A stretch of 27,247 nt of DNA, from contig NIVC01003076.1 of assembly GCA_002269645.1 (NCBI GenBank), positions 1 through 27,247 on the forward strand, written 5' to 3'. The notes beneath the pieces are model-generated. The model saw only the letters and a list, made by a program, of their open reading frames with translations. It made no database searches and was not told the origin of the DNA. Positions 2,187 through 27,247 of this stretch are shown piece by piece. A program made the position numbers and the translations under genes. Within the stretch, counting starts at the first letter, position 1. Each line of letters starts with the position of its first letter. This stretch comes from Macrostomum lignano (Eukaryota).

Positions 2187-2306
2187 AGCGTCTGGAAAAA
2201 TAATAAGCAACAATTATAGCTCATGGCAATCGAGAGGAAACTAAGAAACTGAAGCCTTCAATAGGGGATCTGAGCATCTGAGCATCAATGCGTCTGAGAT
2301 GGTGTG

Positions 2307-2817
2307 CAATAGGGGATCTAAAATGAGTGCAGCAGTGAGGAATAGGGCTCTGAGATGAGTGCAGCAGTGAGGAATAGGGGATCTAAAATGAGTGCAGCAG
2401 TGAGCAATAGGGGATCTGAGATGAGTGCAGCAGTGAGCAATAGGGATCTGAGATGAGTGCAGCAGTGAGCAATAGGGGATCTGAGATGAGTGCAGCAGTG
2501 AGCAATAGGGGATCTGAGATGAGTGCAGCAGTGAGCAATAGGGGATCTGAGATGAGTGCAGCAGTGAGCAATAGGGGATCTGAGATGAGTGCAGCAGTGA
2601 GCAATAGGGGATCTGAGATGAGTGCAGCAGTGAGCAATAGGGGATCTGAGATGAGTGCAGCAGTGAGCAATAGGGGATCTGAGATGAGTGCAGCAGTGAG
2701 CAATAGGGGATCTGAGATGAGTGCAGCAGTGAGCAATAGGGGATCTGAGATGAGTGCAGCAGTGAGCAATAGGGGATCTGAGATGAGTGCAGCAGTGAGC
2801 AATAGGGGATCTGAGAT
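2307..2817. repeat. 33-nt minisatellite, ~15 copies (CTGAGATGAGTGCAGCAGTGAGCAATAGGGGAT)
   Basis: Near-perfect tandem copies read directly, with more divergent copies at the left edge. It explains the periodic 11-aa ORFs at 2318-2914, 2383-2859 and 2453-2833. Confidence 0.97.
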
Positions 2818-3402
2818 AAGTGCGTACAAGTAAGACAAAAGAAATAAATGAACTCCCAAGCATTTGAAGGTATAGTTTGATCGGCAGCATCACCGTATAT
2901 ATTTTAATGGCCAAGGTGTATGATTCATTTTCTTTTAAATTAAAACAAACCGAGAATTAAAACAATGGTAACCTGTTGTCCGCAAACGAAATTGGGCATT
3001 TCATTGACCAAGCAAGCACAGCGGTATGGTATAAATAGTTTTAAAGAAAAATGTTGCTCTCTCTTAGCTCTTGAATCTACTACAGCAATTAAGGCAATGG
3101 AAGCCTACATCTCGAATATAATATATAAAAAGAAACGATTTGTTTGTAACTTAAAAAAACCACAAGAGCAAAGGTGGACTCAACTAAAAAGGAAATTAAA
3201 AACAAATTTTGAATATCAAATCATTAAGTATACGAGCAGGCTAGTTCTTTATTAACTAAATAAAAAAATTACAATCAATATATCCAGACAATGGATATTT
3301 TTGAATAAGGCAACGAAGGAAATACAGCAAATTAGGCATTCAAATACAATAGTGCACTATGGTGAGATGCCGAAGGAGGCAGATAAAGGCAAAGAGAACT
3401 TT

Positions 3403-3796
3403 GGGAATTCCATTGCGCACGTAGACTAGAGAGGGAGAATCCCATTCAGTACACATAGACTATACTGGGGGAATCCCATTGCTTACACATGGACTATACT
3501 GGGGGAATCCCATTGCGTACACATAGACTATACTGGGGGAATCCCATTGCGCACACGTAGACGATATTGGGGGAATCCCATTGCTTACACATGGACTATA
3601 CTGGGGGAATCCCATTGCGTACACATAGACTATACTGGGGAATCCCAATGCGCACACAGACTATACTGGGGGAATCCCATTGCGTACACATAGACTATAC
3701 TGGGGAATCCCATTGCGTACACAGACTATACTGGGGGAATCCCATTGCGTACACAGACTATACTGGGGAACACCATTGCGCAGACTATACTGAGGG
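3403..3796. repeat. ~31-34-nt minisatellite, ~12 copies (GGGGGAATCCCATTGCGTACACATAGACTATACT)
   Basis: Period of 34 nt measured between 3481 and 3515, with shorter variants towards the right. Confidence 0.95.
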
Positions 3797-4386: not shown

Positions 4387-7300
4387 CTACATATTAGGCG
4401 CCCATTTGATGCTCCATTGTTGGAATTTGCCCTCAGCTATGCAGCTGTGCAATCTCGGATTCTGCAAACTGGCCCCATCAATGGGCTTAGTGTCCAAGCA
4501 CAGGGCTGGGGACGCCTTTAATCTGATAAGCGTATTGGGCGGATTAAACTGGAACTGCTGCATAGCGTTGTTAATCTCGCAGCGCGAGAACAGCACCCGA
4601 GCATCCGGTGTAGCCGACATCGCTTGTAAGCACAAATCTGACGATGTGATCTGACCAGAGTCGGAGAACAGCCACTCCTGATTGCCGCCAGAGCCGTGGC
4701 ATGGATACATAGCTGGCGCCGAGCCAACAGAGGCTGTCAGCCTATCCAAACACTTCTCACCCTGCCGCAATTCGCCTCTTTTAGTCAAAGGCGCGCTGGG
4801 CGGCTTTAAATCCGGATAGACATTCTCCAAATACCATTTGAATGACCGGCAGTTCAGACGGCGACGCAGCTCAAGGCGTTCGGACACGTCGCCTGGTTGA
4901 ATGTAGCGAGCGCCGCCTGATGCCTGACGAGCGGGGAATAGTATGATACTAGCTGTGATACTTGCTTTGATAGTCGTTGTGATGCTATGAGCAATCTCCA
5001 CTACCTTGCTAAGCATCCGTAAGATAAAAAGTACTTTCAAACACAGAACAAAGGCGAATGTAGAACATTAAAATAAGATGCTGCATTTCATTGTCAGTAA
5101 CGATTTACTTGCTAAATATTGGTAGCCAGTGACAATTTGACTGTCAGCGGGCAAGAGGAAAGGTTTCCAAAACGTGATCAATATCTTAAAACTCACCTGG
5201 AAATAGAACTGTTTATATTCGTCCAGCCAGACCTCGGCAGCTCGGCGGGTATTGCGAGTGAACACTACCCCGGATCCGCCTGGAAACGAGTAGGGATGCT
5301 GCCTCCGGAACACGTGGCCAACCCGGCTACAGGGCAGAATCTCCAGCACGCAGTGGCACTGCCACACTCTCAGAGAGAATTCCAGATTCTCGGCGCCCCA
5401 AACGTCCATTTTAGTATCGTATTGGCCTAATTCGTTGAACAATTGTCTCTCGATGCTAAACAGGCCGCCAGCAATCATTGGCGTTCGAATCGGTGCGGTT
5501 GGATCGCGCGTTCTGGCCGCGAGTTCGCGCGAATTCAAATTGTCCCATTTGAATACGAGATTCCAGGCGAATCCGCCTTTTAAATTGGCCGAAGCGCCAA
5601 TATAGTCGAAATTGTCCATTCCGATGACGTCAATGATTGGCGAGACTACGGCTTTCCTATCCGATTTGATACGACTCAGCAGCGGCTGAAGCCAGTCTTT
5701 GTTGCACTCGCAGTGGCTGTCTAGAAAGGTCAACACGTGACCAGTGGCGGCGTTGGCTCCGCGAATTCTCGACCGCATTAGGCCTTCACGACGATTGTTG
5801 CGGATTAGGCGAACCTGCCGGGTTTAGTGAAGGTGCAAGAATATTATTGCAAAATCGGTTTATATAAAACTGATAGTTGGCCCAATAGTGGGTTCAGAAT
5901 ATAGTTGTCTCAGGTTAATTATCTCGCAAATTTATAAACTTATTAAAAGATCTCGACTCTCACATTGAAGTTCCTGGGTTGTCAGATGGGCTTCCGGTGT
6001 GCCTAGCAAAATTGCATAACATGTAGCTAACACATGTTACATTGGTAATACTAATTAGATGACGAAGAATTTACGTATCTTAAAACTAGGATAGTTACTC
6101 TTGCCGTTTATCCACGCTACAATATGGTGATAAACCCAATATGGTGATGGACCCAATATGGTAATGAATTCAATATAGTGATGGATCCAGTATGATGATG
6201 GATCTAATATGGTGATGGATACAATTGGGTGATGGATCCAGCATGGTGATGGATCCAATATAGTGGTGGATCCAGTATGATGATAGATCTAATATGGTGA
6301 TGGATACAATAGGGTGATGAATTCAGTATGGTGATGAATCCAGTATGATAATCGATCCAGTATGATGATGGATCTAATATAGTGATGGATACAATTGGGT
6401 GATGAATTCAGTATGGTGATGGATCCAATAGTGGTGGATCCAGTATGATGATGGATCTAATATGGTGATGGATACAATTGGGTGATGAATTCAGTATGGT
6501 GATGGATCCAATAGTGGTGGATCCAGTATGATGATGGATCTAATATGGTGATGGATACAATTGGGTGATGGATCCAGCATGGTGATGGATCCAATATAGT
6601 GGTGGATCCAGTATGATGATGGATCTAATATAGTGATGGATACAATAGGGTGATGAATTCAGTATGGTGATGAATCCAGTATGATGATGGATCTAATATG
6701 GTGATGGATACAATTGGGTGATGAATTCAGTATGGTATCAAGCCATGCTTACCTTGGCTATTTGAGTCAGCAGTTTACCAGTGTCCTCGTCCGTACTAAA
6801 ATCGTCAACAAGAATAATCTCGCGAACCAGATGGTAGGGCGACATCCGGAACACGCTGAGCACAGTGCGCACCAAGGTAGACCTGGCTTCGTTATGAAAC
6901 GTTATAACAACGCTAGTATCGGGCAAATCTGTCGAATCGTATTGAATCGAACGGCACTGCGATTCCCTAGTATCCGGCACATCTCGAATAGCTGAAACAC
7001 TGTCGCTAACCTGCTGGTTGAATTTGTTCTTGGCGTATTTGTCCTCGCCAGCGTGCCAGGCACCGCCGGCCACGTAGGCCTTCCAATCGAAGTTGGTCCA
7101 CATTACCTTGGCAACGGGTTGGGATCACTTAGCAACCGGTCTAATAAATGGCTGTAGTAGCCTGTATTTTAGGTTTTTGTTTTTTTGGCAAAACACTTGA
7201 AATTGACCAATAAAATCTGTCGCTATATGATTTTCTGAAGCCACACAACAAATAATAGTAATACTGAAATCGTCCATCTAAACCACAGATAGTAGAAAAA

Positions 7301-14069: not shown

Positions 14070-17000
14070 CTAGTTCCTGTTCTCCAGCCACTCCAGAACC
14101 TTCACCAGCAGATCCCTGGCGATGCCAGAAGCCTCCTGCACCAGCCTCTTGGCCAACTCGATAGCGGCCTGCTTGCCGTGCTCAGCCAGCTCCCTCAGGA
14201 TGGCCTTGATCTGCTCCATGTCGATACCGATGATGTCCAGGATGTAGGCGTCGTCGTTGCGGTTCTCCAGCCACTCCAGAACCTTCACCAGCAGATCCCT
14301 GGCGATACCAGAAGCCTCCTGCAGCAGTCTCTTGGCCAGCTCGATAGCAGCCTGCTTGCCGTGCTCAGCCAGCTCCCTCAGGATGGCCTTGATCTGCTCC
14401 ATGTCGATACCGATGATGTCCAGGATGTAGGCGTCGTCGTTGCGGTTCTCCAGCCACTCCAGAACCTTCACCAGTAGATCCTTGGCGATGCCAGAAGCCT
14501 CCTGCAGCAGCCTCTTGGCCAGCTCGATAGCAGCCTGCTTGCCGTGCTCAGCCAGCTCCCTCAGGATGGCCTTGACCTCCTCGATGTTGATACCGATGAT
14601 GTCCAGGATGTAGGCGTCGTCGTTGCGGTTTCCAGCCACTCGAGGACACGGATGAGGATGTCCTTCAAAGCTCCCTGGGCCTCCTGCAGCAGTCTTTTGG
14701 CCAGCTCGATAGCAGCCTGCTTGCCGTGCTCAGCCAGCTCCCTCAGGATAGCCTTGACCTGCTCGATGTCGATACCGATGATGTCCAGGATATAGGCGGA
14801 CCTCTGACGCTCCAGGATCTCGAGCACCTTGATGAGGATGTCCTTCAGGGCTCCTTGAGCGTGCTCCAGCATCCTCTTGGCCAGCTCGATAGCGGCGTCC
14901 ATACCGTTCTGAGCGAGCTCCCTCAGGATGGCCTTGACCTCTTCGATGTTGATGCCGATCAGATCAAGAATGAACGGGCTCTTGTGAACTCCGAGCTTTC
15001 CCTCGATCTCCAGAATAATGATCTTCTCCATAAGTCTCATGAGCATATCCTTCATAATTCCCTGAGCTCCATCCATGAGCTCTTGAACCAGTTTCTTCGC
15101 AGCCTCAGTACCCTCCTCTCTTAGAGTCTCCATAATGCGATCGATGATAGACTGCTCATCAAAAGCCTGAATAGATTCGTTGCGATTCTCGAGCCACTCC
15201 AGAACCTTCACCAGTAGATCTTTGACAATGCCAGAAGCCTCCTGGATCATCTTCTTGGCCAGCTCAATAGCGGCCTGCTTGCCGTGCTCAGCCAGCTCCC
15301 TCAGGATAGCCTTGACCTCCTCGATGTTAATACCGATGATGTCCAGGATGTAGGCGTCGTGGTTGCGGTTCTGCAGCCACTCGAGTACCCGAATGAGGAT
15401 GTCCTTCAGAGCACCTTCGACGACCTCCTGCAGCAGCTTCTTGGCCAGCTCGATAGCGGCCTGCTTGCCGTGCTCAGCCAGCTCCCTCAGGATGGCCTTG
15501 ACCTGCTCGATGTCGATACCGATGATGTCCAGGATGTAGGCGGACCTCTGACGCTCCAGGATCTCGAGCACCTTGATGAGGATGTCCTTAAGAGCTCCTT
15601 GGGCTTCCTCCAGCATCCTCTTGGCCAGCTCGATAGCGGCCTGCTTGCCGTGCTGAGCGAGCTCCCTCAGGATGGCCTTGACCTCCTCCACGTCGATGCC
15701 GATCAGGTCCAGGATGAAAGCGTCGTCGTTGCGGTTCTCCAGCCACTCCAGAACCTTCACCAGCAGATCCCTGGCGATGCCAGAAGCCTCCTGCAGCAGT
15801 CTCTTGGCCAGCTCGATAGCGGCCTGCTTGCCGTGCTCAGCCAGCTCCCTCAGGATGGCCTTGATCTGCTCCATGTCGATACCGATGATGTCCAGGATGT
15901 AGGCGTCGTCGTTGCGGTTCTCCAGCCACTCCAGAACCTTCACCAGCAGATCCTTGGCGATGCCAGATGCCTCCTGCAGCAGTCTCTTGGCCAACTCGAT
16001 AGCGGCCTGCTTGCCGTGCTCAGCCAGCTCCCTCAGGATGGCCTTGATCTGCTCCATGTCGATACCGATGATGTCCAGGATATAGGCGGACCTCTGACGC
16101 TCCAGAATTTCGAGGACCTTGATGAGGATGTCCTTCAGGGCTCCTTGAGCGTGCTCCAACATCCTCTTGGCCAGCTCGATAGCGGCGTCCATACCGTTCT
16201 GAGCGAGCTCCCTCAGGATGGCCTTGACCTCCTCGACGTCAATGCCGATCAGGTCGAGAATGAATGCGTCGTCATTGCGGTTCTCCAGCCACTCGAGGAC
16301 ACGGATGAGGATGTCCTTCAGAGCTCCCTGGGCCTCCTGCAGCAGCCTCTTGGCCAGCTCGATAGCGGCCTGCTTGCCGTGCTCAGCCAGCTCCCTCAGG
16401 ATGGCCTTGACCTGCTCGATGTCGATACCGATGATGTCCAGGATGTAGGCGGACCTCTGACGCTCCAGGATCTCGAGCACCTTGATGAGGATGTCCTTCA
16501 GAGCTCCCTGAGCGTGCTGCAACATCTTTTTGGCCAGCTCGATAGCGGCCTGCTTTCCGTTCTGAGCGAGCTCCCTCAGGATGGCCTTGACCTCCTCCAC
16601 GTCGATGCCGATCAGGTCCAGGATGAAAGCGTCGTCGTTGCGGTTCTCCAGCCACTCCAGAACCTTCACCAGTAGATCCTTGGCAATGCCAGAAGCCTCC
16701 TGCACCAGCCTCTTGGCCAGCTCGATAGCGGCCTGCTTGCCGTGCTCAGCCAGCTCCCTCAGGATGGCCTTGATCTGCTCCATGTCGATACCGATGATGT
16801 CCAGGATGTAGGCGTCGTCGTTGCGGTTCTCCAGCCACTCCAGAACCTTTACCAGCAGATCCTTGGCGATGCCAGAAGCCTCCTGCAGCAGCCTCTTGGC
16901 CAGCTCGATAGCGGCCTGCTTGCCGTGCTCAGCCAGCTCCCTCAGGATGGCCTTGATCTGCTCCATGTCGATACCGATGATGTCCAGGATGTAGGCGGAC

Positions 17001-17275
17001 TTCTGACGCTCCAGAATTTCGAGGACCTTGATGAGGATGTCCTTCAGGGCTCCTTGAGCGTGTTCCAGCATCCTCTTGGCCAGCTCGATAGCGGCGTCCA
17101 TACCGTTCTGAGCGAGCTCCCTCAGGATAGCCTTGACTTCCTCCACGTCGATGCCGATCAGATCCAGGATGAAGGCGTCATCCTGCAGTTCACCCTTCGC
17201 TACCTCCTGCAGAGGAGCGGCCTGGGCAAAGGCGAATGCCAAAGAGGCGAGTCCTAGTAGAATCAAGAGTTTCAT
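14070..17275 (-). CDS. Secreted tandem-repeat polyprotein, unrecognised family: signal peptide + 17 amphipathic helical ~60-aa units, ~1068 aa; 1-nt deletion at 14630/14631
   Basis: ATG at 17275 gives MKLLILLGLASLAFAFAQA, a classic signal peptide. The ORF is intronless with strongly G/C-ending codons and is made of units like DDAYILDIIGIDMEQIKAILRELAEHGKQAAIELAKRLLQEASGIAKDLLVKVLEWLENRN. The 14070-14639 ORF carries units 15-17 in the adjacent frame. Confidence 0.88.
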
Positions 17276-17322
17276 TGTTGTCTTGGATGTGGTTTGTGAA
17301 TAAATGGAGCTGAAAAGACTTG

Positions 17323-17330
17323 TATTTATA
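17323..17330 (-). promoter_or_regulatory. Putative TATA box (TATAAATA) of the polyprotein gene
   Basis: Minus strand reads cgTATAAATAcaag 47 nt upstream of the signal-peptide ATG, a plausible spacing for a short 5' UTR. Confidence 0.55.
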
Positions 17331-18733
17331 CGTTTTTGAAACCGAAACCGCATGACAGGTTCTCAAGTTTTGAGTAGGCGTTGTGGAATGAAATTGTTGC
17401 TCATTCTGTTTTTGTAAGCGTTTTAAGTCACGAGTTGTCGCGTGTTGGAAGTCGCGTTGCAGTAACTTTTTAATGATAAGGAATTTTCTGCTTTCCTTTC
17501 TAGCTCTACTTCCCCCTCCCTGCTTTGTAAAAACTGGGTGGATGGTATGAGCTATTTTGCACTGAAGCTGAATGTGAAAATACTTTTAATAGCTAAAATT
17601 TGTATGTTATGCGACGAACGATAGCTTGTACATGTACTAGCAAGCAATGTAACCGCCAATCCAAATTGTTGTCAGCTGATTTTTAGTTAAAATAATCTCG
17701 ATTATTGCGCATTAATATTGGAATTTTGATTTAGAACCGTATCTAATTTTTAGTAACCAATGTCTTTTCTATTGGCGTTAAATTTATTGGCTGCCATTAA
17801 CCTGTATGTGTATATTTTAGCTCAGTTGAGCCAGAGTATGAGAAAAGTATAGTAGATACGACAATTGTCAGTTTATCTGATGTGGTATTTGCCACTTGGC
17901 ATCTTTATCAAATTCAGTAGCAAAATTAGATAAATAGATTATTTTTAAACGTTTTCAAGTTTCGCATTGTTCTTTTCAATCTTTTATAAATCATTGGATC
18001 TGTCATTGGCAATAAAGTAAATAGTTAAAGTAGTTAAGCATATTCTCAGGCAAGGAAACTTTTTAAATTCTTCTTTTAATTACAAAATAACCCTTTTTGC
18101 ACATGTTAGACTGCTCAATAACCTACGTGATCCCAGAACGATTTGACCAGATGTAAAAGACGTAAATACTGCATGTTTAGTACATTCGTAACCTTGTTAC
18201 GAGTATCTAGTAGATTTTGACGCGACCTGGGGACTTGGGGGGGGGGGTAATTCTCATGGACCCTGGCTCCAGTTCAGTGCATTCATTCATTTCAAATTAC
18301 TTTATGGGAAATTTTAGAAGAGTAAAACTGTGAATCAAGCCGGCAGGTTTTTTTGTTCGGCAGTCTACTTATATGGAAGCTCAGGGTGCAGAATATTGTA
18401 GCAATGGCGGAAAACTTTCGATGAAAATATTTATTTTTATTTGAAAATTCCACTCAAACCACAAACACAGCCTCGGTCGGACAAAAACTAAATTGAAACG
18501 CAAATTTTGTTGCTACAAGGTCTGAGCGCAGCACAGGAATTATAAAAATTGGCCGGGTTAATACATGCTCAGAAGTCTTCAAGCTGAGCTCACAATAGCA
18601 TTAGGGGTTGGAATGAATTTTTTGATTGAAGAAATCCCAGCTAAAGCAAAGCAGGTTAACGCACGCCCAATGTTCACAACACGTCCGTACACTTCAACGG
18701 GCGTTCGACGCTAATTTTACAGTTTTTTGTCAG

Positions 18734-21170: not shown

Positions 21171-23696
21171 CTAATCTTGAAACTGAAAAAGCAACTCATA
21201 AAGATATGTCGTACTTGACAGCTTGCCTGTTTGGCGTAGAATTTTGTCGACCGGCAAAGAACGCTGCTTTGACTGTTGCTGCTGCTTGCGCTGCAGATAG
21301 TGCACCGGATCCTGCAAACGCGAGCTTCTGAATTGCTCCTTCTGCTGATCACTGCCAGTCAGATTAAAATTGGTATTCGAAGAGTTCGACTGCTGCTTCT
21401 GCGGCTGCTGCAGTTGACTGCCTGCAGAGACGCCTGTAACTGCATGAGAAGCCGTCGGCGATTCGACAGGACCGCCGCCTTGAGCTGCCAGCCCGTTTCG
21501 AAGCTCAGTCAGCATGCGTAGTGCGTCGTCAACAGATCGACCGACTGGCATGTCGTTGATGGTCACCTGGCAGATTGTCTTGTTTCGGTCAATCAGAAAG
21601 GTGCCTCTGTGCAGAAGCGAGTACGAAAGAAATATCGTGTACGAAATATAAAAGGAAATGTAAGGAATATAGAGTGGAAAATAAGCAATGCTTTCTACTC
21701 AATGAGATGACTTTTTTGAGTAGACAAACTTTATCTTGCATGTTGGAACTCCATCAAGTAGTGACGGTTATCTAACAGGTTGAGAACTCCAACGAGCAGG
21801 GTAAGTATAGCTAGGGGGAGGGTAGCCCAGTTGTCCAGCGCGGTGCTCTGATGTGCCAGCGACCTAGGCTCGATTCCAAGTGCAGTCACATTAATTTTTG
21901 GGCTAAACTGGAATCTTGGTTTGGCTCTGCTCGTGCAATTAACGCCATTAAGGACCAACCTCCCAAGGCGCAGTGAAGTGTACATGCCTAACGATAAATA
22001 AAGTTAGGGCCGCTGTGCAATCCTGTGTGAGTGTGTGCCTGTGCGTATGACTGCGTACGAATCCGCACGCTTGTGTGCCTGCTCAGGGGAGTCGGCGGAA
22101 TGGGCGGAATGCCTCTCGCCGGTTGTGTGACAATTTCGCTTGAAGTTCGCCAGGGTGCACACAGCCCCTGCTCTAATAAAATTGTTAAATATTTCTAATG
22201 GTCCTTGCTCTGTGCATGCAAGAATTTTAATGAGATTCAACCGACACTTTCATTTATTTCATTTTGCTCATTTTTCAGTTGGTTTAAATTTGTCTGCACA
22301 GTCGATTGTAACAAGTGGCGCAGCCACATGCATACCTGTAGGCAGCGCCGCTAGCCGCAAGAACACCGTACGCCCTTGAGATCTCGTGCGACCTGTCGCT
22401 CAGCAGGACGATGGACTCGGCATTGCTGCCGGCTCCCAGGCCCCGTTCAGCTTTTGGCGCCTTCAACCAGGCCAGGTGAGTGTACACCGAGTCAGTGGAG
22501 CAGCACACAATGTTGCAGCTTTGCGCAGCGAATTCGGAGAACTTTTCCGTGAATTGCACTATTTCGGTTGGGCAGACGAATGTGCTGGAATGTTTAGACA
22601 TATAGCATATACTATTATTAATAATAATATTCAGGCACGTCGCCACCGGATAGGACGGGAGGGGGACATGTCCCCCCCCCCCGATAAAATCTCTGAGGGG
22701 AACATGCCAATGCTTTGGCGCCTTCGGCGCTAAAATGAGTGCCTTCGGCGCTAAAATGAGTGCCTGCGGCGCTAAAATAAGTGCCTTCGGCGCTAGAAGG
22801 AATGCCTGCGGCGCTAAAAGAAATGCTTGCGGCGTCAAAATGAGTGCCTGCGGCGCCAAAATGAGTGCCAAAATTTAGTGGACATGTGCATGTTGAATTC
22901 TTGGCTTTGTCTCCCGAACATAAAATCCATGGCGACTCCCCTGATAATATTATTATTAAGTGTACACGTCGAGGATGATAATTTTGATCGTGTATAATAT
23001 TAGAAAAAGCAAAAAATAAATAAAATGACAGAAAACATAAATATAAGGTTAGTAAATAAAGACATTTTTTGAGATGATACTGCATGGTGAACGCACTTTA
23101 GGTTCAGTATTATAAAGTCTACACAAAAGTTCCTACGACAGGACATTTGCCACAGGATTCACTCAGAAACACTTAAACTAAAGTTGAAATACGTCATTTA
23201 ATCAGCTGTAGTCTGGCTTGTGGGTGCGCGTGCACTTAGATGTGCACGTCTGGCTGGTTTGGGGGTTGGGGTTTAGCGCTGCAGCGTCTGCGTGCTTAGG
23301 GTGGTTACACCCACCCAACTTTGGCATTAAATATATTGGCGTGAGCCAGTGAGGTCTCCTCACGTTTTGTTATTCACTGCAATTCAACCCACGGTCTTAC
23401 ACAGCAATGATTGTGCATTTATTGGACGCGTTTTAAAGAATGGCCCTTACTCCCCACAAAGTGGTACTTGTACTCCCAATTACTCCATGTAATTTTAACT
23501 GTGTTACTCGGATTTTAATAATTCAAATTGGCACAACTAAGAAGTGAACTTACAAGTCAGCCGGGTAGAACACTAGTACAAGATAATCGGCACCTTTGAG
23601 GGCCTCGTCCAGAGTCAAATCGACAATTTCACCGCGACGAACAGCCTGGCTGAGCAACGGCGGCGCCGTGTCTCCGGGAGCAAGATGTGCTGGCAT
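21171..23696 (-). CDS. Peroxiredoxin, Prx1/AhpC-type, 3 exons, ~275 aa, lacking the resolving-Cys motif, with a Q/S-rich C-terminal tail
   Basis: Exons 23554-23696 (MPAHLAPGDTAP...LVFYPAD), 22336-22584 and 21171-21606. Splicing restores FYPADF|TFVCPTE and AYR|GTFLID...QVTINDMPVGRSVDDALR with GT/AG sites and matching phases. The last ~30-45 nt could contain a further small intron. Confidence 0.88.
21814..22002 (+). mobile_element. Second, distinct tRNA-derived SINE-like element in Prx intron 2
   Basis: A-box-like TAGCCCAGTTG at 21823-21833, B-box-like GGCTCGATTCC at 21867-21877, and an ATAAATAAA end at ~22002. Possible TSD agctaggg/agttaggg. Confidence 0.5.
22632..22943 (+). mobile_element. 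Non-autonomous hAT-type MITE, copy 2 (312 bp), in Prx intron 1
   Basis: TIRs CAGGCACGTCGCCA and TGGCGACTCCCCTG (11/14). Perfect 8-bp TSD ATAATATT at 22624-22631 and 22944-22951. An 8-bp TSD with short TIRs is the established hAT signature. Confidence 0.9.
22717..22870. repeat. 21-nt tandem repeat (~7 copies, GGCGCTAAAATGAGTGCCTTC) inside MITE copy 2
   Basis: Read directly, and it produces the 7-aa periodicity (ALILAPQ) in ORF 22284-22871. MITE copy 1 has only ~2 copies. Confidence 0.9.
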
Positions 23697-26785: not shown

Positions 26786-27247
26786 CTAGCTGCTGTTCTC
26801 CAGCCACTCCAGAACCTTCACCAGCAGATCCCTGGCAATGCCAGAAGCCTCCTGCACCAGCCTCTTGGCCAGCTCGATAGCAGCCTGCTTGCCGTGCTCA
26901 GCCAGCTCCCTCAGGATGGCCTTGACCTCCTCGATGTTGATACCGATGATGTCCAGGATGTAGGCGTCGTCGTTGCGGTTCTCAAGCCACTCGAGGACAC
27001 GGATGAGGATGTCCTTCAGAGCTCCCTGGGCCTCCTGCAGCAGTCTCTTGGCCAGCTCGATAGCGGCCTGCTTGCCGTGCTCAGCCAGCTCCCTCAGGAT
27101 AGCCTTGACCTGCTCGATGTCGATACCGATGATGTCCAAGATGTAGGCGGACCTCTGACGCTCCAGGATCTCGAGCACCTTGATGAGGATGTCCTTAAGA
27201 GCTCCTTGGGCTTCCTCCAGCATCCTCTTGGCCAGCTCGATAGCGGC
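26786..27247 (-). CDS. Second copy (paralog) of the secreted helical-repeat polyprotein, 3' end only (runs off the window)
   Basis: The last 2.5 units are nearly identical to units in 14070-17275, ending ...VLEWLENSS* instead of ...ENRN*. The sequence after the stop is unrelated to that of copy 1. Confidence 0.9.
   Translation of the reverse strand, partial: AAIELAKRMLEEAQGALKDILIKVLEILERQRSAYILDIIGIDIEQVKAILRELAEHGKQAAIELAKRLLQEAQGALKDILIRVLEWLENRNDDAYILDIIGINIEEVKAILRELAEHGKQAAIELAKRLVQEASGIARDLLVKVLEWLENSS

What the first reader, a model, noticed from the sequence alone, without database searches (positions are those of the whole stretch)
14070..17200. Linkers encode an apparent processing code: basic residue, then dipeptide(s), then an invariant F/Y-I-L-D N-terminus
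Seen: every junction into a canonical unit is R-ND-DA-(Y/F)ILD, R-NH-DA-YILD, RQ(R/K)-SA-YILD or K-SP-FILD. An even number of residues always separates the basic residue from the aromatic start, and the last pair is always X-Ala or X-Pro. The independently diverged linker K-SP obeys the same rule. Established: endoproteolysis at basic residues followed by dipeptidyl-peptidase removal of X-Ala/X-Pro pairs matures promelittin and yeast alpha-factor. Inference: ~57-aa units are released with a free hydrophobic N-terminus, and the acidic or polar dipeptides keep them inactive until then. The ND/NH pair would need a less restrictive enzyme, such as a cathepsin C-type DPP.
Basis: partly seen in the sequence, partly recalled or inferred. 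Interest (0 to 1): 0.72.

Follow-up and report, generated by a model that had tools for sequence, protein, structure and literature searches.

The report
Flatworm secreted 17-unit helical repeat protein

Summary
A minus-strand gene (14070-17275) encodes a signal peptide, a 15-residue spacer and 17 tandem units: 16 canonical units starting F/Y-I-L-D and one divergent unit. The first unit breaks the even-number rule (K-GELQDDA-FILD, 7 residues). A 1-nt deletion near 14631 breaks the frame in this contig only. The units are recent duplicates, so there are about six independent junction types.

The gene belongs to Macrostomum lignano, where four near-identical copies exist. It has no Pfam, PDB-sequence or Foldseek match. 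The only relatives are short fragments from another species. They keep x-Ala|Tyr-Ile-(Ile/Leu)-Asp, but 4 of 8 junctions have no basic residue in or next to the linker.

No site fits the convertase consensus. DPP-IV could not remove N-D, N-H, N-E or S-I. The units are acidic (net -2 to -5).

AlphaFold models each unit as a three-helix bundle, with the NRNDDA linker as a low-confidence coil.

Best reading: a codon-biased secreted multi-module protein with exposed polar linkers. Cleavage into units is possible but untested. The specific code is unlikely (about 0.1).

The parts
17321..17328 (-). TATAAATA box about 50 nt upstream of the start codon
   Evidence: read directly
14070..17275 (-). Coding sequence of the repeat protein. 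It has no intron. In this contig a 1-nt deletion near 14631 breaks the frame. Stop codon at 14070-14072.
   Evidence: Intact near-identical copies are P0002 and P0003.
17219..17275 (-). Signal peptide MKLLILLGLASLAFAFAQA (judged by eye: n-, h- and c-regions, AQA|AP)
   Evidence: A relative, P0011, has an equivalent signal peptide.
17174..17218 (-). N-terminal spacer APLQEVAKGELQDDA. This junction breaks the even-number rule.
16994..17173 (-). Unit 1, type B (FILD...LERQKSA)
16811..16993 (-). Unit 2, type A (YILD...LENRNDDA)
16628..16810 (-). Unit 3, type A
16448..16627 (-). Unit 4, type B (…RQRSA)
16265..16447 (-). Unit 5, type A with a B-like third helix (mosaic)
16085..16264 (-). Unit 6, type B
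15902..16084 (-). Unit 7, type A
15719..15901 (-). Unit 8, type A
15539..15718 (-). Unit 9, type B
15353..15538 (-). Unit 10, type A variant, 62 aa, linker NRNHDA
15164..15352 (-). Unit 11, type A, ends NRNESIQA
14975..15163 (-). Unit 12, divergent type C (FDEQSIID...MEKIIILEIEGKLGVHKSP). Its tail resembles the MEQLIIDEIGSDEA tail of relatives' units.
14795..14974 (-). Unit 13, type B
14613..14794 (-). Unit 14, type A, carrying the 1-nt deletion near 14631
14430..14612 (-). Unit 15, type A
14247..14429 (-). Unit 16, type A
14073..14246 (-). Unit 17, type A, last unit; ends LEWLENRN and is followed by the stop codon
26786..27247 (-). 3' end of a second, paralogous repeat-protein gene (ends LEWLENSS*, like P0004). 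It runs off the window.

Best explanation
This is a lineage-restricted gene of the free-living flatworm Macrostomum lignano. Its strong codon bias suggests high expression.

It encodes a secreted protein of about 117 kDa: a signal peptide, a short acidic spacer, and 17 tandem copies of an acidic, unusually hydrophobic module of about 56 residues. Each module is a short N-terminal turn (Y/F-I-L-D-I-I-G) followed by three amphipathic helices. The modules are joined by 5-6-residue polar linkers.

The apparent 'processing code' has three ordinary sources:
(a) Tandem duplication and gene conversion copied a few linker types many times.
(b) The module start, x-Ala-Tyr/Phe-Ile-Leu/Ile-Asp, is conserved and is part of the fold.
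(c) The linkers have the usual helix-end composition, with Asn, Arg or Lys after the C-terminus of helix 3 and Asp, Ser or Asn before the next N-terminus.

Shown here: the architecture, the secretion signal, purifying selection over the whole unit, the helical module model, and the lack of any known homologue.

Inferred: 54-56% of each module is hydrophobic, more than a lone three-helix bundle is likely to bury. The modules therefore probably pack on each other, oligomerise or hold hydrophobic ligands, so the protein would act as an abundant extracellular carrier or matrix protein.

Every M. lignano linker carries one exposed Arg or Lys. Limited proteolysis into units of about 6.5 kDa is therefore possible, but neither the sequence nor the relatives require it.
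For: - Array and units.
- Species and copies: four cluster members, three of them located on contigs of GCA_002269645.1, which papers identify as the M. lignano assembly.
- Signal peptide and TATA box.
- Purifying selection: many synonymous-only columns across the unit, including the linker.
- Codon bias: GC3 is 0.80 against 0.59-0.70 in neighbouring genes; ATC:ATT:ATA = 103:16:0.
- Module model: the two-unit AlphaFold model has pLDDT 79 and pTM 0.61, with helices at 11-23, 25-38 and 42-56 and the linker 57-62 as coil with the lowest confidence. The same three helices appear per unit in the single-sequence model.
- Acidic, hydrophobic units: net charge -2 to -5, GRAVY +0.13 to +0.51, 54-56% hydrophobic residues.
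- Relatives: linkers vary in length and sequence (NQNQGNA, NQNKSEDA, GNKQGDA, NKNGQGST, NKIQGAQDEA, EIGSDEA, EIAGDA). Four of 8 junctions lack any basic residue, yet Ala-Tyr-Ile-(Ile/Leu)-Asp is kept.
- No known family: Pfam gives only sub-threshold or repeat-inflated noise, the PDB sequence search has best E = 0.016, and Foldseek has best E = 1.1.
Against: - Tandem arrays of near-identical small units behind a signal peptide, encoded without introns, are typical of cleaved tandemly repetitive polyproteins (PMC3079579).
- Every internal M. lignano linker does contain a basic residue.
- The even spacing holds in 9 of 10 junction types that have one, including 4 of 4 in relatives (naive p = 0.011, collapsed p = 0.035).
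- The carrier or matrix function rests only on composition and analogy.
- No expression, localisation or protein-level data were available.
Confidence: 0.45

Rival explanations
1. It is a tandemly repetitive polyprotein that is cut in the exposed linkers by a trypsin-like, legumain-like or other non-convertase protease. This releases 17 helical units of about 6.5-7 kDa, with ragged or aminopeptidase-trimmed ends. No dipeptide parity code is needed. The released units would act as small carriers of hydrophobic ligands, as nematode NPA units do.
For: - The architecture, the intronless array and the apparent high expression match the 'economy of synthesis' picture of such polyproteins.
- The linker is the least confident, coil part of the model.
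- Each M. lignano linker has one exposed Arg or Lys followed by Asn or Ser.
- Unit number differs between copies, 12 to 17 units, as expected if copy number only sets dosage.
Against: - There is no furin or convertase motif.
- No single residue type is common to all linkers across relatives. Basic residues are missing in 4 of 8 junctions, and Asn is missing in RQRSA, EIGSDEA and EIAGDA.
- Relatives carry introns inside the units.
- The RQ(R/K)SA linker has high helix propensity and was modelled as continuous helix, although at pLDDT below 50.
Confidence: 0.3
2. An endoprotease cuts after the linker Arg or Lys. Stepwise dipeptidyl-peptidase removal of an even number of residues then exposes a free Y/F-I-L-D N-terminus, which activates the units.
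For: - All 15 internal junctions into canonical units fit.
- The paralogue junction R-NA-YILD and the junction R-NESIQA into the divergent unit also have even spacing.
- Relatives with a Lys in or next to the linker have spacings of 4, 8, 4 and 6 residues.
- The -1 residue is Ala or Pro in all M. lignano junctions and in 7 of 8 junctions of relatives.
- The precedent of Kex2 plus Ste13 in yeast, and of promelittin maturation, is established knowledge.
Against: - The first unit is out of phase (7, 15 or 17 residues).
- Four of 8 junctions in relatives have no basic residue, and one ends S-T before YALG.
- The sites lack the convertase consensus.
- N-D, N-H, N-E, S-I, S-E, Q-G and N-G are not DPP-IV substrates.
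- Cathepsin C has no stop at Tyr/Phe and would run on until it met an N-terminal Lys or Arg, a Pro, or a folded domain.
- The units are already acidic, so an acidic dipeptide mask adds little.
- The rule was formed after the fact on about six independent junction types.
Confidence: 0.12
3. The released units are membrane-active (antimicrobial or cytolytic) amphipathic peptides, held inactive within the precursor.
For: The helices are amphipathic (hydrophobic moment 0.46-0.57) and the N-terminus is hydrophobic. Weak, non-significant similarities to frog antimicrobial peptides appeared (ranatuerin in PDB at E = 0.31; Pfam Antimicrobial_2 at E = 0.91 on a relative).
Against: The units are net negative (-2 to -5), 56 residues long, and modelled as closed three-helix bundles. 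The similarity scores are at chance level.
Confidence: 0.05
4. It is not a functional gene, but a decaying repeat or an assembly artefact.
For: The frame is broken in this window near 14631.
Against: - Three other copies are intact.
- Synonymous changes far exceed replacements within unit types.
- A signal peptide, a TATA box and strong codon bias are present.
- Relatives with spliced exons exist in another species.
Confidence: 0.03

Closest known systems
Yeast alpha-factor, honeybee promelittin and apidaecin-type precursors (basic site plus X-Ala/X-Pro dipeptide spacers; established knowledge)
   Same: All have a signal peptide. The yeast alpha-factor and apidaecin precursors also have tandem product copies. 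The residue just before each product start is Ala or Pro. The SA, SP and NA linkers would be legitimate DPP-IV or Ste13 substrates.
   Different: - The known precursors use dibasic KR or RR sites, and their spacers consist only of X-Ala or X-Pro pairs.
- Here the sites are monobasic or R-Q-R, and the main linker starts with N-D.
- The products here are 56-residue folded acidic modules rather than short peptides.
- The basic residue is not conserved in relatives.
Tandemly repetitive polyproteins: nematode polyprotein allergens (ABA-1) and filaggrin (PMC3079579)
   Same: A large secreted precursor of about a dozen or more near-identical helical units, encoded without introns in the array, with short regular linkers. 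A hydrophobic helical unit would suit lipid carriage.
   Different: - NPA units are about 133 aa with a seven-helix fold, and are cut at K/R-x-K/R-R furin-like motifs.
- Here the units are about 56 aa with three helices and no such motif.
- There is no sequence or fold similarity.
- Relatives have introns in the array.
- Cleavage is unproven.
Cestode 8-kDa hydrophobic-ligand-binding proteins, including Echinococcus antigen B subunits (own knowledge)
   Same: These are flatworm secreted proteins, almost wholly alpha-helical, of about 7-8 kDa. They oligomerise and carry lipids.
   Different: They are encoded as single-unit genes rather than arrays. No similarity was detected: nothing from other flatworms was recovered in the library of 1.84 billion proteins, and there was no Pfam hit.
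Uncleaved tandem three-helix-bundle proteins such as staphylococcal protein A domains (own knowledge)
   Same: Repeats of about 58 residues, each an independent three-helix bundle, joined by short polar linkers and working as one polypeptide.
   Different: These are bacterial, cell-wall anchored and immunoglobulin-binding. No detectable similarity was found.

Membership tests
Basic-site plus dipeptidyl-spacer precursors (alpha-factor, promelittin, apidaecin type) | N-terminal signal peptide and several product copies in one precursor | tested here: met
   Signal peptide and 17 units.
Basic-site plus dipeptidyl-spacer precursors (alpha-factor, promelittin, apidaecin type) | Dibasic or convertase-consensus cleavage site at every junction | tested here: not met
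   The sites are LENR|N, ERQ(R/K)|S and VHK|S, with no basic residue at P2, P4 or P6. The first junction has only a Lys, 7 residues away.
Basic-site plus dipeptidyl-spacer precursors (alpha-factor, promelittin, apidaecin type) | Spacer made only of X-Ala or X-Pro dipeptides | tested here: not met
   This holds for SA, SP and NA. It fails for the commonest linker ND-DA, and for NH-DA and NE-SI-QA.
Basic-site plus dipeptidyl-spacer precursors (alpha-factor, promelittin, apidaecin type) | Processing sites conserved in relatives | tested here: not met
   The basic residue is absent in 4 of 8 junctions of relatives. Ala at -1 is kept in 7 of 8.
Basic-site plus dipeptidyl-spacer precursors (alpha-factor, promelittin, apidaecin type) | Mature products with the predicted N-termini are detected | not testable with these tools
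   This needs mass spectrometry or N-terminomics. A full-text search for unit peptides found nothing.
Tandemly repetitive polyproteins (NPA, filaggrin type) | Tandem units of similar sequence in one secreted precursor, with few or no introns in the array | tested here: met
   One uninterrupted 3.2-kb array in M. lignano. This is not so in the relatives, which have a phase-1 intron after GA(A/F)K.
Tandemly repetitive polyproteins (NPA, filaggrin type) | Regularly spaced K/R-x-K/R-R cleavage motifs | tested here: not met
   No such motif occurs at any junction. Motif definition from PMC3079579.
Tandemly repetitive polyproteins (NPA, filaggrin type) | Homology to NPA or filaggrin units | tested here: not met
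   No Pfam family passes its cut-off on single units, and Foldseek has best E = 1.1.
Tandemly repetitive polyproteins (NPA, filaggrin type) | Post-translational cleavage into units | not testable with these tools
   No protein-level data were available.
Alpha-solenoid repeats (Sel1, TPR, HEAT) | A repeat profile match above the curated threshold | tested here: not met
   WSLR scores 18.7 bits on one unit against a cut-off of 27. The whole-protein scores arise only by summing 17 weak matches.

The most novel reading that the evidence does not exclude
Macrostomid flatworms have independently evolved a tandemly repetitive polyprotein. It would be a further example of this rare protein class, alongside the best-characterised ones, nematode NPAs and filaggrin. 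In M. lignano it would be matured by a non-canonical route: a single exposed Arg or Lys in each linker, followed by in-phase aminoterminal dipeptide trimming that stops at the folded module. This would yield 17 copies of a new 6.5-kDa three-helix carrier of hydrophobic ligands.
Probability: 0.12. Interest if true: 0.6.

Novelty: new member of a known kind. Interest (0 to 1): 0.35.

Why it matters
Tandemly repetitive polyproteins are described as rare (PMC3079579). A flatworm example built from a new three-helix module would be a fresh case of making many copies of one protein from a single transcript.

M. lignano is a tractable laboratory model, with RNAi, transgenesis and an inbred line, so the question can be tested directly.

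If the protein proves to be an ordinary uncleaved multi-module protein, the value is smaller. It would still be an undescribed, lineage-restricted family whose codon bias suggests abundance, with no Pfam or structural relative. It would also be a caution that linker 'codes' read from recently duplicated repeats overcount their evidence.

Tried and rejected
- **Pfam on the whole protein.** It listed GDH_HM3, Ribosomal_L10, CUT, PASTA and others at E down to 1e-15. These were rejected: single units score below every cut-off, so the values are sums of 17 weak matches.
- **Word-indexed homology search with the full protein.** It found only the gene's own cluster.
- **HMMER profile search of 1.84 billion representatives.** It gave five hits. 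P0005 is the window's own second gene. P0006 and P0007 are true relatives. P0008 and P0009 are unrelated repeat proteins at E of about 1e-5 and were rejected.
- **Two further profile searches.** They added P0010-P0013.
- **JGI metagenome scan.** Nothing.
- **PDB sequence search and Foldseek against PDB.** Nothing significant.
- **Literature searches.** Searches for unit peptides, for Macrostomum plus polyprotein or antimicrobial peptide, and for the second assembly accession found no description of this gene.
- **Helix N-cap idea.** I considered that S/D-A/P is simply the N-cap of a long helix. The model shows only a one-turn helix at ILDI, so this remains a partial explanation.
- **Exon-based register.** I considered that the true structural unit is circularly shifted, because relatives' exons start at helix 3. 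This was rejected because the protein's own N-terminus starts with the F/YILD segment and its C-terminus ends after helix 3.
- **Plus-strand ORFs 15284-16675 and 16742-17257.** These are antisense by-products of the GC3-rich repeat.
Full report
**What is in the window**

Tandem Repeats Finder reports a 183-bp array of 17.0 copies at 14079-17179, with a 363-bp higher-order period. The coding strand is the minus strand. ORF 14561-17353 (930 aa) and ORF 14070-14639 (189 aa) are two pieces of one gene.

The real start is the ATG at 17275. It encodes MKLLILLGLASLAFAFAQA, a typical signal peptide, followed by APLQEVAKGELQDDA. A TATAAATA box lies about 50 nt upstream.

Seventeen units follow:
- Type A: 61 aa, YILDIIGID...LEWLENRNDDA.
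- Type B: 60 aa, FILDLIGID...LEILERQ(R/K)SA.
- One divergent unit at 14975-15163: FDEQSIID...MEKIIILEIEGKLGVHKSP.

The protein stops right after helix 3 of the last unit (LEWLENRN*). A 1-nt deletion near 14631 (CTGGAGAACCGC -> CTGGAAACCGC) breaks the frame in this contig only.

**Whose gene it is**

The gene's protein cluster has four members. Three of them lie on contigs of assembly GCA_002269645.1. Several papers name that assembly as the Macrostomum lignano genome.

This species is a recent polyploid, which explains the near-identical copies. L001 is 99.9% identical to the window and L003 is 98.6% identical, and both are intact at the deletion site.

The copies carry 12 to 17 units. A second, paralogous gene ends at 26786 in the window.

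Neighbours on the same strand are a peroxiredoxin, a polypeptide GalNAc-transferase and a Hakai-type RING protein.

**Checking the observation**

The qualifications are these:
- The first canonical unit is preceded by K-GELQDDA, which is 7 residues. Counting from either plausible signal-peptidase site gives 15 or 17. The 'always even' rule therefore fails once inside the stated span.
- The units are recent duplicates, 60-98% identical in protein (80-98% among type A units). Their mosaic structure shows exchange between units.
- The independent evidence is therefore about six junction types: R-NDDA, R-SA, K-SP, R-NESIQA, R-NA in paralogue P0004, and the odd K-GELQDDA. Five of six are even, which gives p = 0.11.
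- Codon tables show purifying selection over the whole unit. The -1 Ala uses four codons without ever changing residue, but many positions inside the helices behave in the same way.

**Relatives**

The word-indexed search with the full protein found nothing outside the cluster. A HMMER profile search of 1.84 billion representatives found two true relatives, P0006 and P0007. Two profile searches added P0010-P0013.

The relatives that share 38-50% identity with the window units (P0006, P0007, P0011-P0013; P0010 is treated separately under 'Seen in passing') are short genomic fragments from ENA metagenome assemblies and from a second NCBI assembly, GCA_041443025.1, whose organism I could not identify. 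Contig L008 shares an exon with the P0012 fragment from that assembly.

Their arrays have short GT-AG, phase-1 introns after GA(A/F)K, in the loop between helices 2 and 3.

Their junctions are:

| Source | Junction |
|---|---|
| P0006 | IIDEIGSDEA\|YIID |
| P0006 | EQVNQNQGNA\|YILD |
| P0007 | HINKIQGAQDEA\|YIID |
| P0007 | HMNQNKSEDA\|Y-KIG |
| P0013 | NLNKNGQGST\|YALG |
| P0013 | NLGNKQGDA\|YILG |
| P0012 | EEEIAGDA\|YIID |
| P0011 | signal peptide-LPVEDASQTEVEVTSDA\|YIID |

Three points follow from this table:
- The Ala-Tyr-Ile-(Ile/Leu)-Asp start is the conserved feature.
- The linker is the most variable part, in both length and sequence.
- Four of 8 junctions have no basic residue. This includes the N-terminal junction and both junction types of contig L004.

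Overall 9 of 10 junction types are even. The naive p is 0.011, and p is 0.035 after collapsing the homologous [KR]-x-x-D-A linkers. This is suggestive only, and the rule was chosen after seeing the data.

The tail of the window's divergent unit (MEKIIILEIEG...) resembles the relatives' MEQLIIDEIG... tail. It is therefore an old unit type, not simply decay.

**Structure and chemistry**

The two-unit AlphaFold model built with the small family alignment has pLDDT 79 and pTM 0.61. Each unit is a one-turn helix at ILDI, then helices at 11-23, 25-38 and 42-56. The linker R57-Y62 is coil and has the lowest confidence.

The single-sequence three-unit model shows the same helices. It drew the RQKSA linker as a continuous helix, but at pLDDT below 50, so this is unresolved.

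No Pfam family passes its threshold on single units, and the whole-protein Pfam hits are repeat-inflated. The PDB sequence search and Foldseek (best E = 1.1) give nothing.

Trimmed units are 6.1-6.6 kDa with pI 4.7-5.3 and net charge -2 to -5. GRAVY is +0.13 to +0.51, 54-56% of residues are hydrophobic, and the helices are amphipathic.

Codon bias is strong: GC3 is 0.80 against 0.59-0.70 in neighbouring genes. I take this as a sign of high expression, which is an inference.

**Does the enzymology fit?**

This paragraph rests on established specificities, not on tests made here.
- Furin and prohormone convertases need a second basic residue at P2, P4 or P6. LEWLENR|N, LEILERQR|S and GVHK|S have none.
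- DPP-IV and Ste13 remove X-Ala or X-Pro. This fits SA, SP, NA and the last pair DA. It does not fit N-D, N-H, N-E or S-I, nor the relatives' S-E, Q-G, N-G or I-Q.
- Cathepsin C is broad enough, but nothing in the sequence stops it at Tyr/Phe. It would halt only if the folded module blocks it.
- The units are acidic, so the idea that acidic dipeptides keep them inactive has little force. They do not resemble cationic lytic peptides.

**Conclusion**

The architecture is that of a secreted array of small helical modules with exposed polar linkers. Two readings remain open:
- An uncleaved multi-module protein. I favour this slightly because no cleavage determinant is shared across the family.
- A tandemly repetitive polyprotein cut in the linkers. 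This is favoured by analogy with NPAs and filaggrin and by the basic residue in every M. lignano linker.

The specific 'basic residue plus in-phase dipeptides' code is the least likely version, at about 0.1. It is not excluded, because the even spacing recurs in relatives.

The function, as a carrier of hydrophobic ligands or a matrix protein, is inferred from composition only.

M. lignano is a free-living laboratory flatworm.

**Seen in passing**
- Contig L007 joins a bacterial-type Rho N-terminal domain in frame to two-thirds of a unit that is 89% identical in DNA to the window's units. It is probably a chimera.
- Several non-coding minisatellites lie elsewhere in the window.

Noticed in passing
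window 26786-27247 (-): This is the 3' end of a second, paralogous repeat-protein gene. It ends LEWLENSS* like P0004 on L002 and runs off the window edge. The family is therefore locally duplicated, about 9.5 kb upstream of the first gene.
   Followed up: partly
window ~14631 (-): A 1-nt deletion (CTGGAGAACCGC -> CTGGAAACCGC) breaks the reading frame in this contig only. L001 (99.9% identical) and L003 are intact. This is either an assembly error or a dead allele. The public gene model P0001 skips it with a false intron.
   Followed up: yes
L007 (ENA ERZ27309203, 506 bp), 221-496: This ORF starts with a bacterial-type Rho N-terminal domain (Pfam Rho_N) behind GC-rich bacterial-looking upstream DNA. 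It continues in frame into the last two-thirds of a unit that is 89% identical in DNA to the window's units, ending LEWLENRN*. The join lies at ...FAILKELAEHG..., where the two sequences happen to resemble each other. It is probably a chimeric contig or read, but this is unexplained.
   Followed up: partly
L004, L005, L006, L008: The relatives' arrays have short phase-1 GT-AG introns after GA(A/F)K, in the helix 2-3 loop. The M. lignano array has no intron. In L004 two unit types alternate strictly, and neither linker has a basic residue.
   Followed up: partly
window 15284-16675 (+) and 16742-17257 (+): Long antisense ORFs (463 and 171 aa) run opposite the array. They are by-products of the GC3-rich repetitive coding strand, not genes.
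   Followed up: partly
window 2302-2823, 3403-3780, 6120-6736, 22720-22869: Minisatellites of 33 bp x16, 34 bp x11, 17/85 bp x36/7 and 21 bp x7. They lie between or inside the neighbouring genes (Hakai-type RING, GalNAc-transferase, peroxiredoxin). All three frames stay open across the 33-bp array, and no protein-family signal was seen.
   Followed up: no
window 14070-17275 (-), units 5 and 14: Some type A units carry the type B version of the helix 2-3 loop and helix 3 (AQGALKDILIR instead of ASGIAKDLLVK). This mosaic is evidence of gene conversion or unequal crossing-over between unit types.
   Followed up: partly
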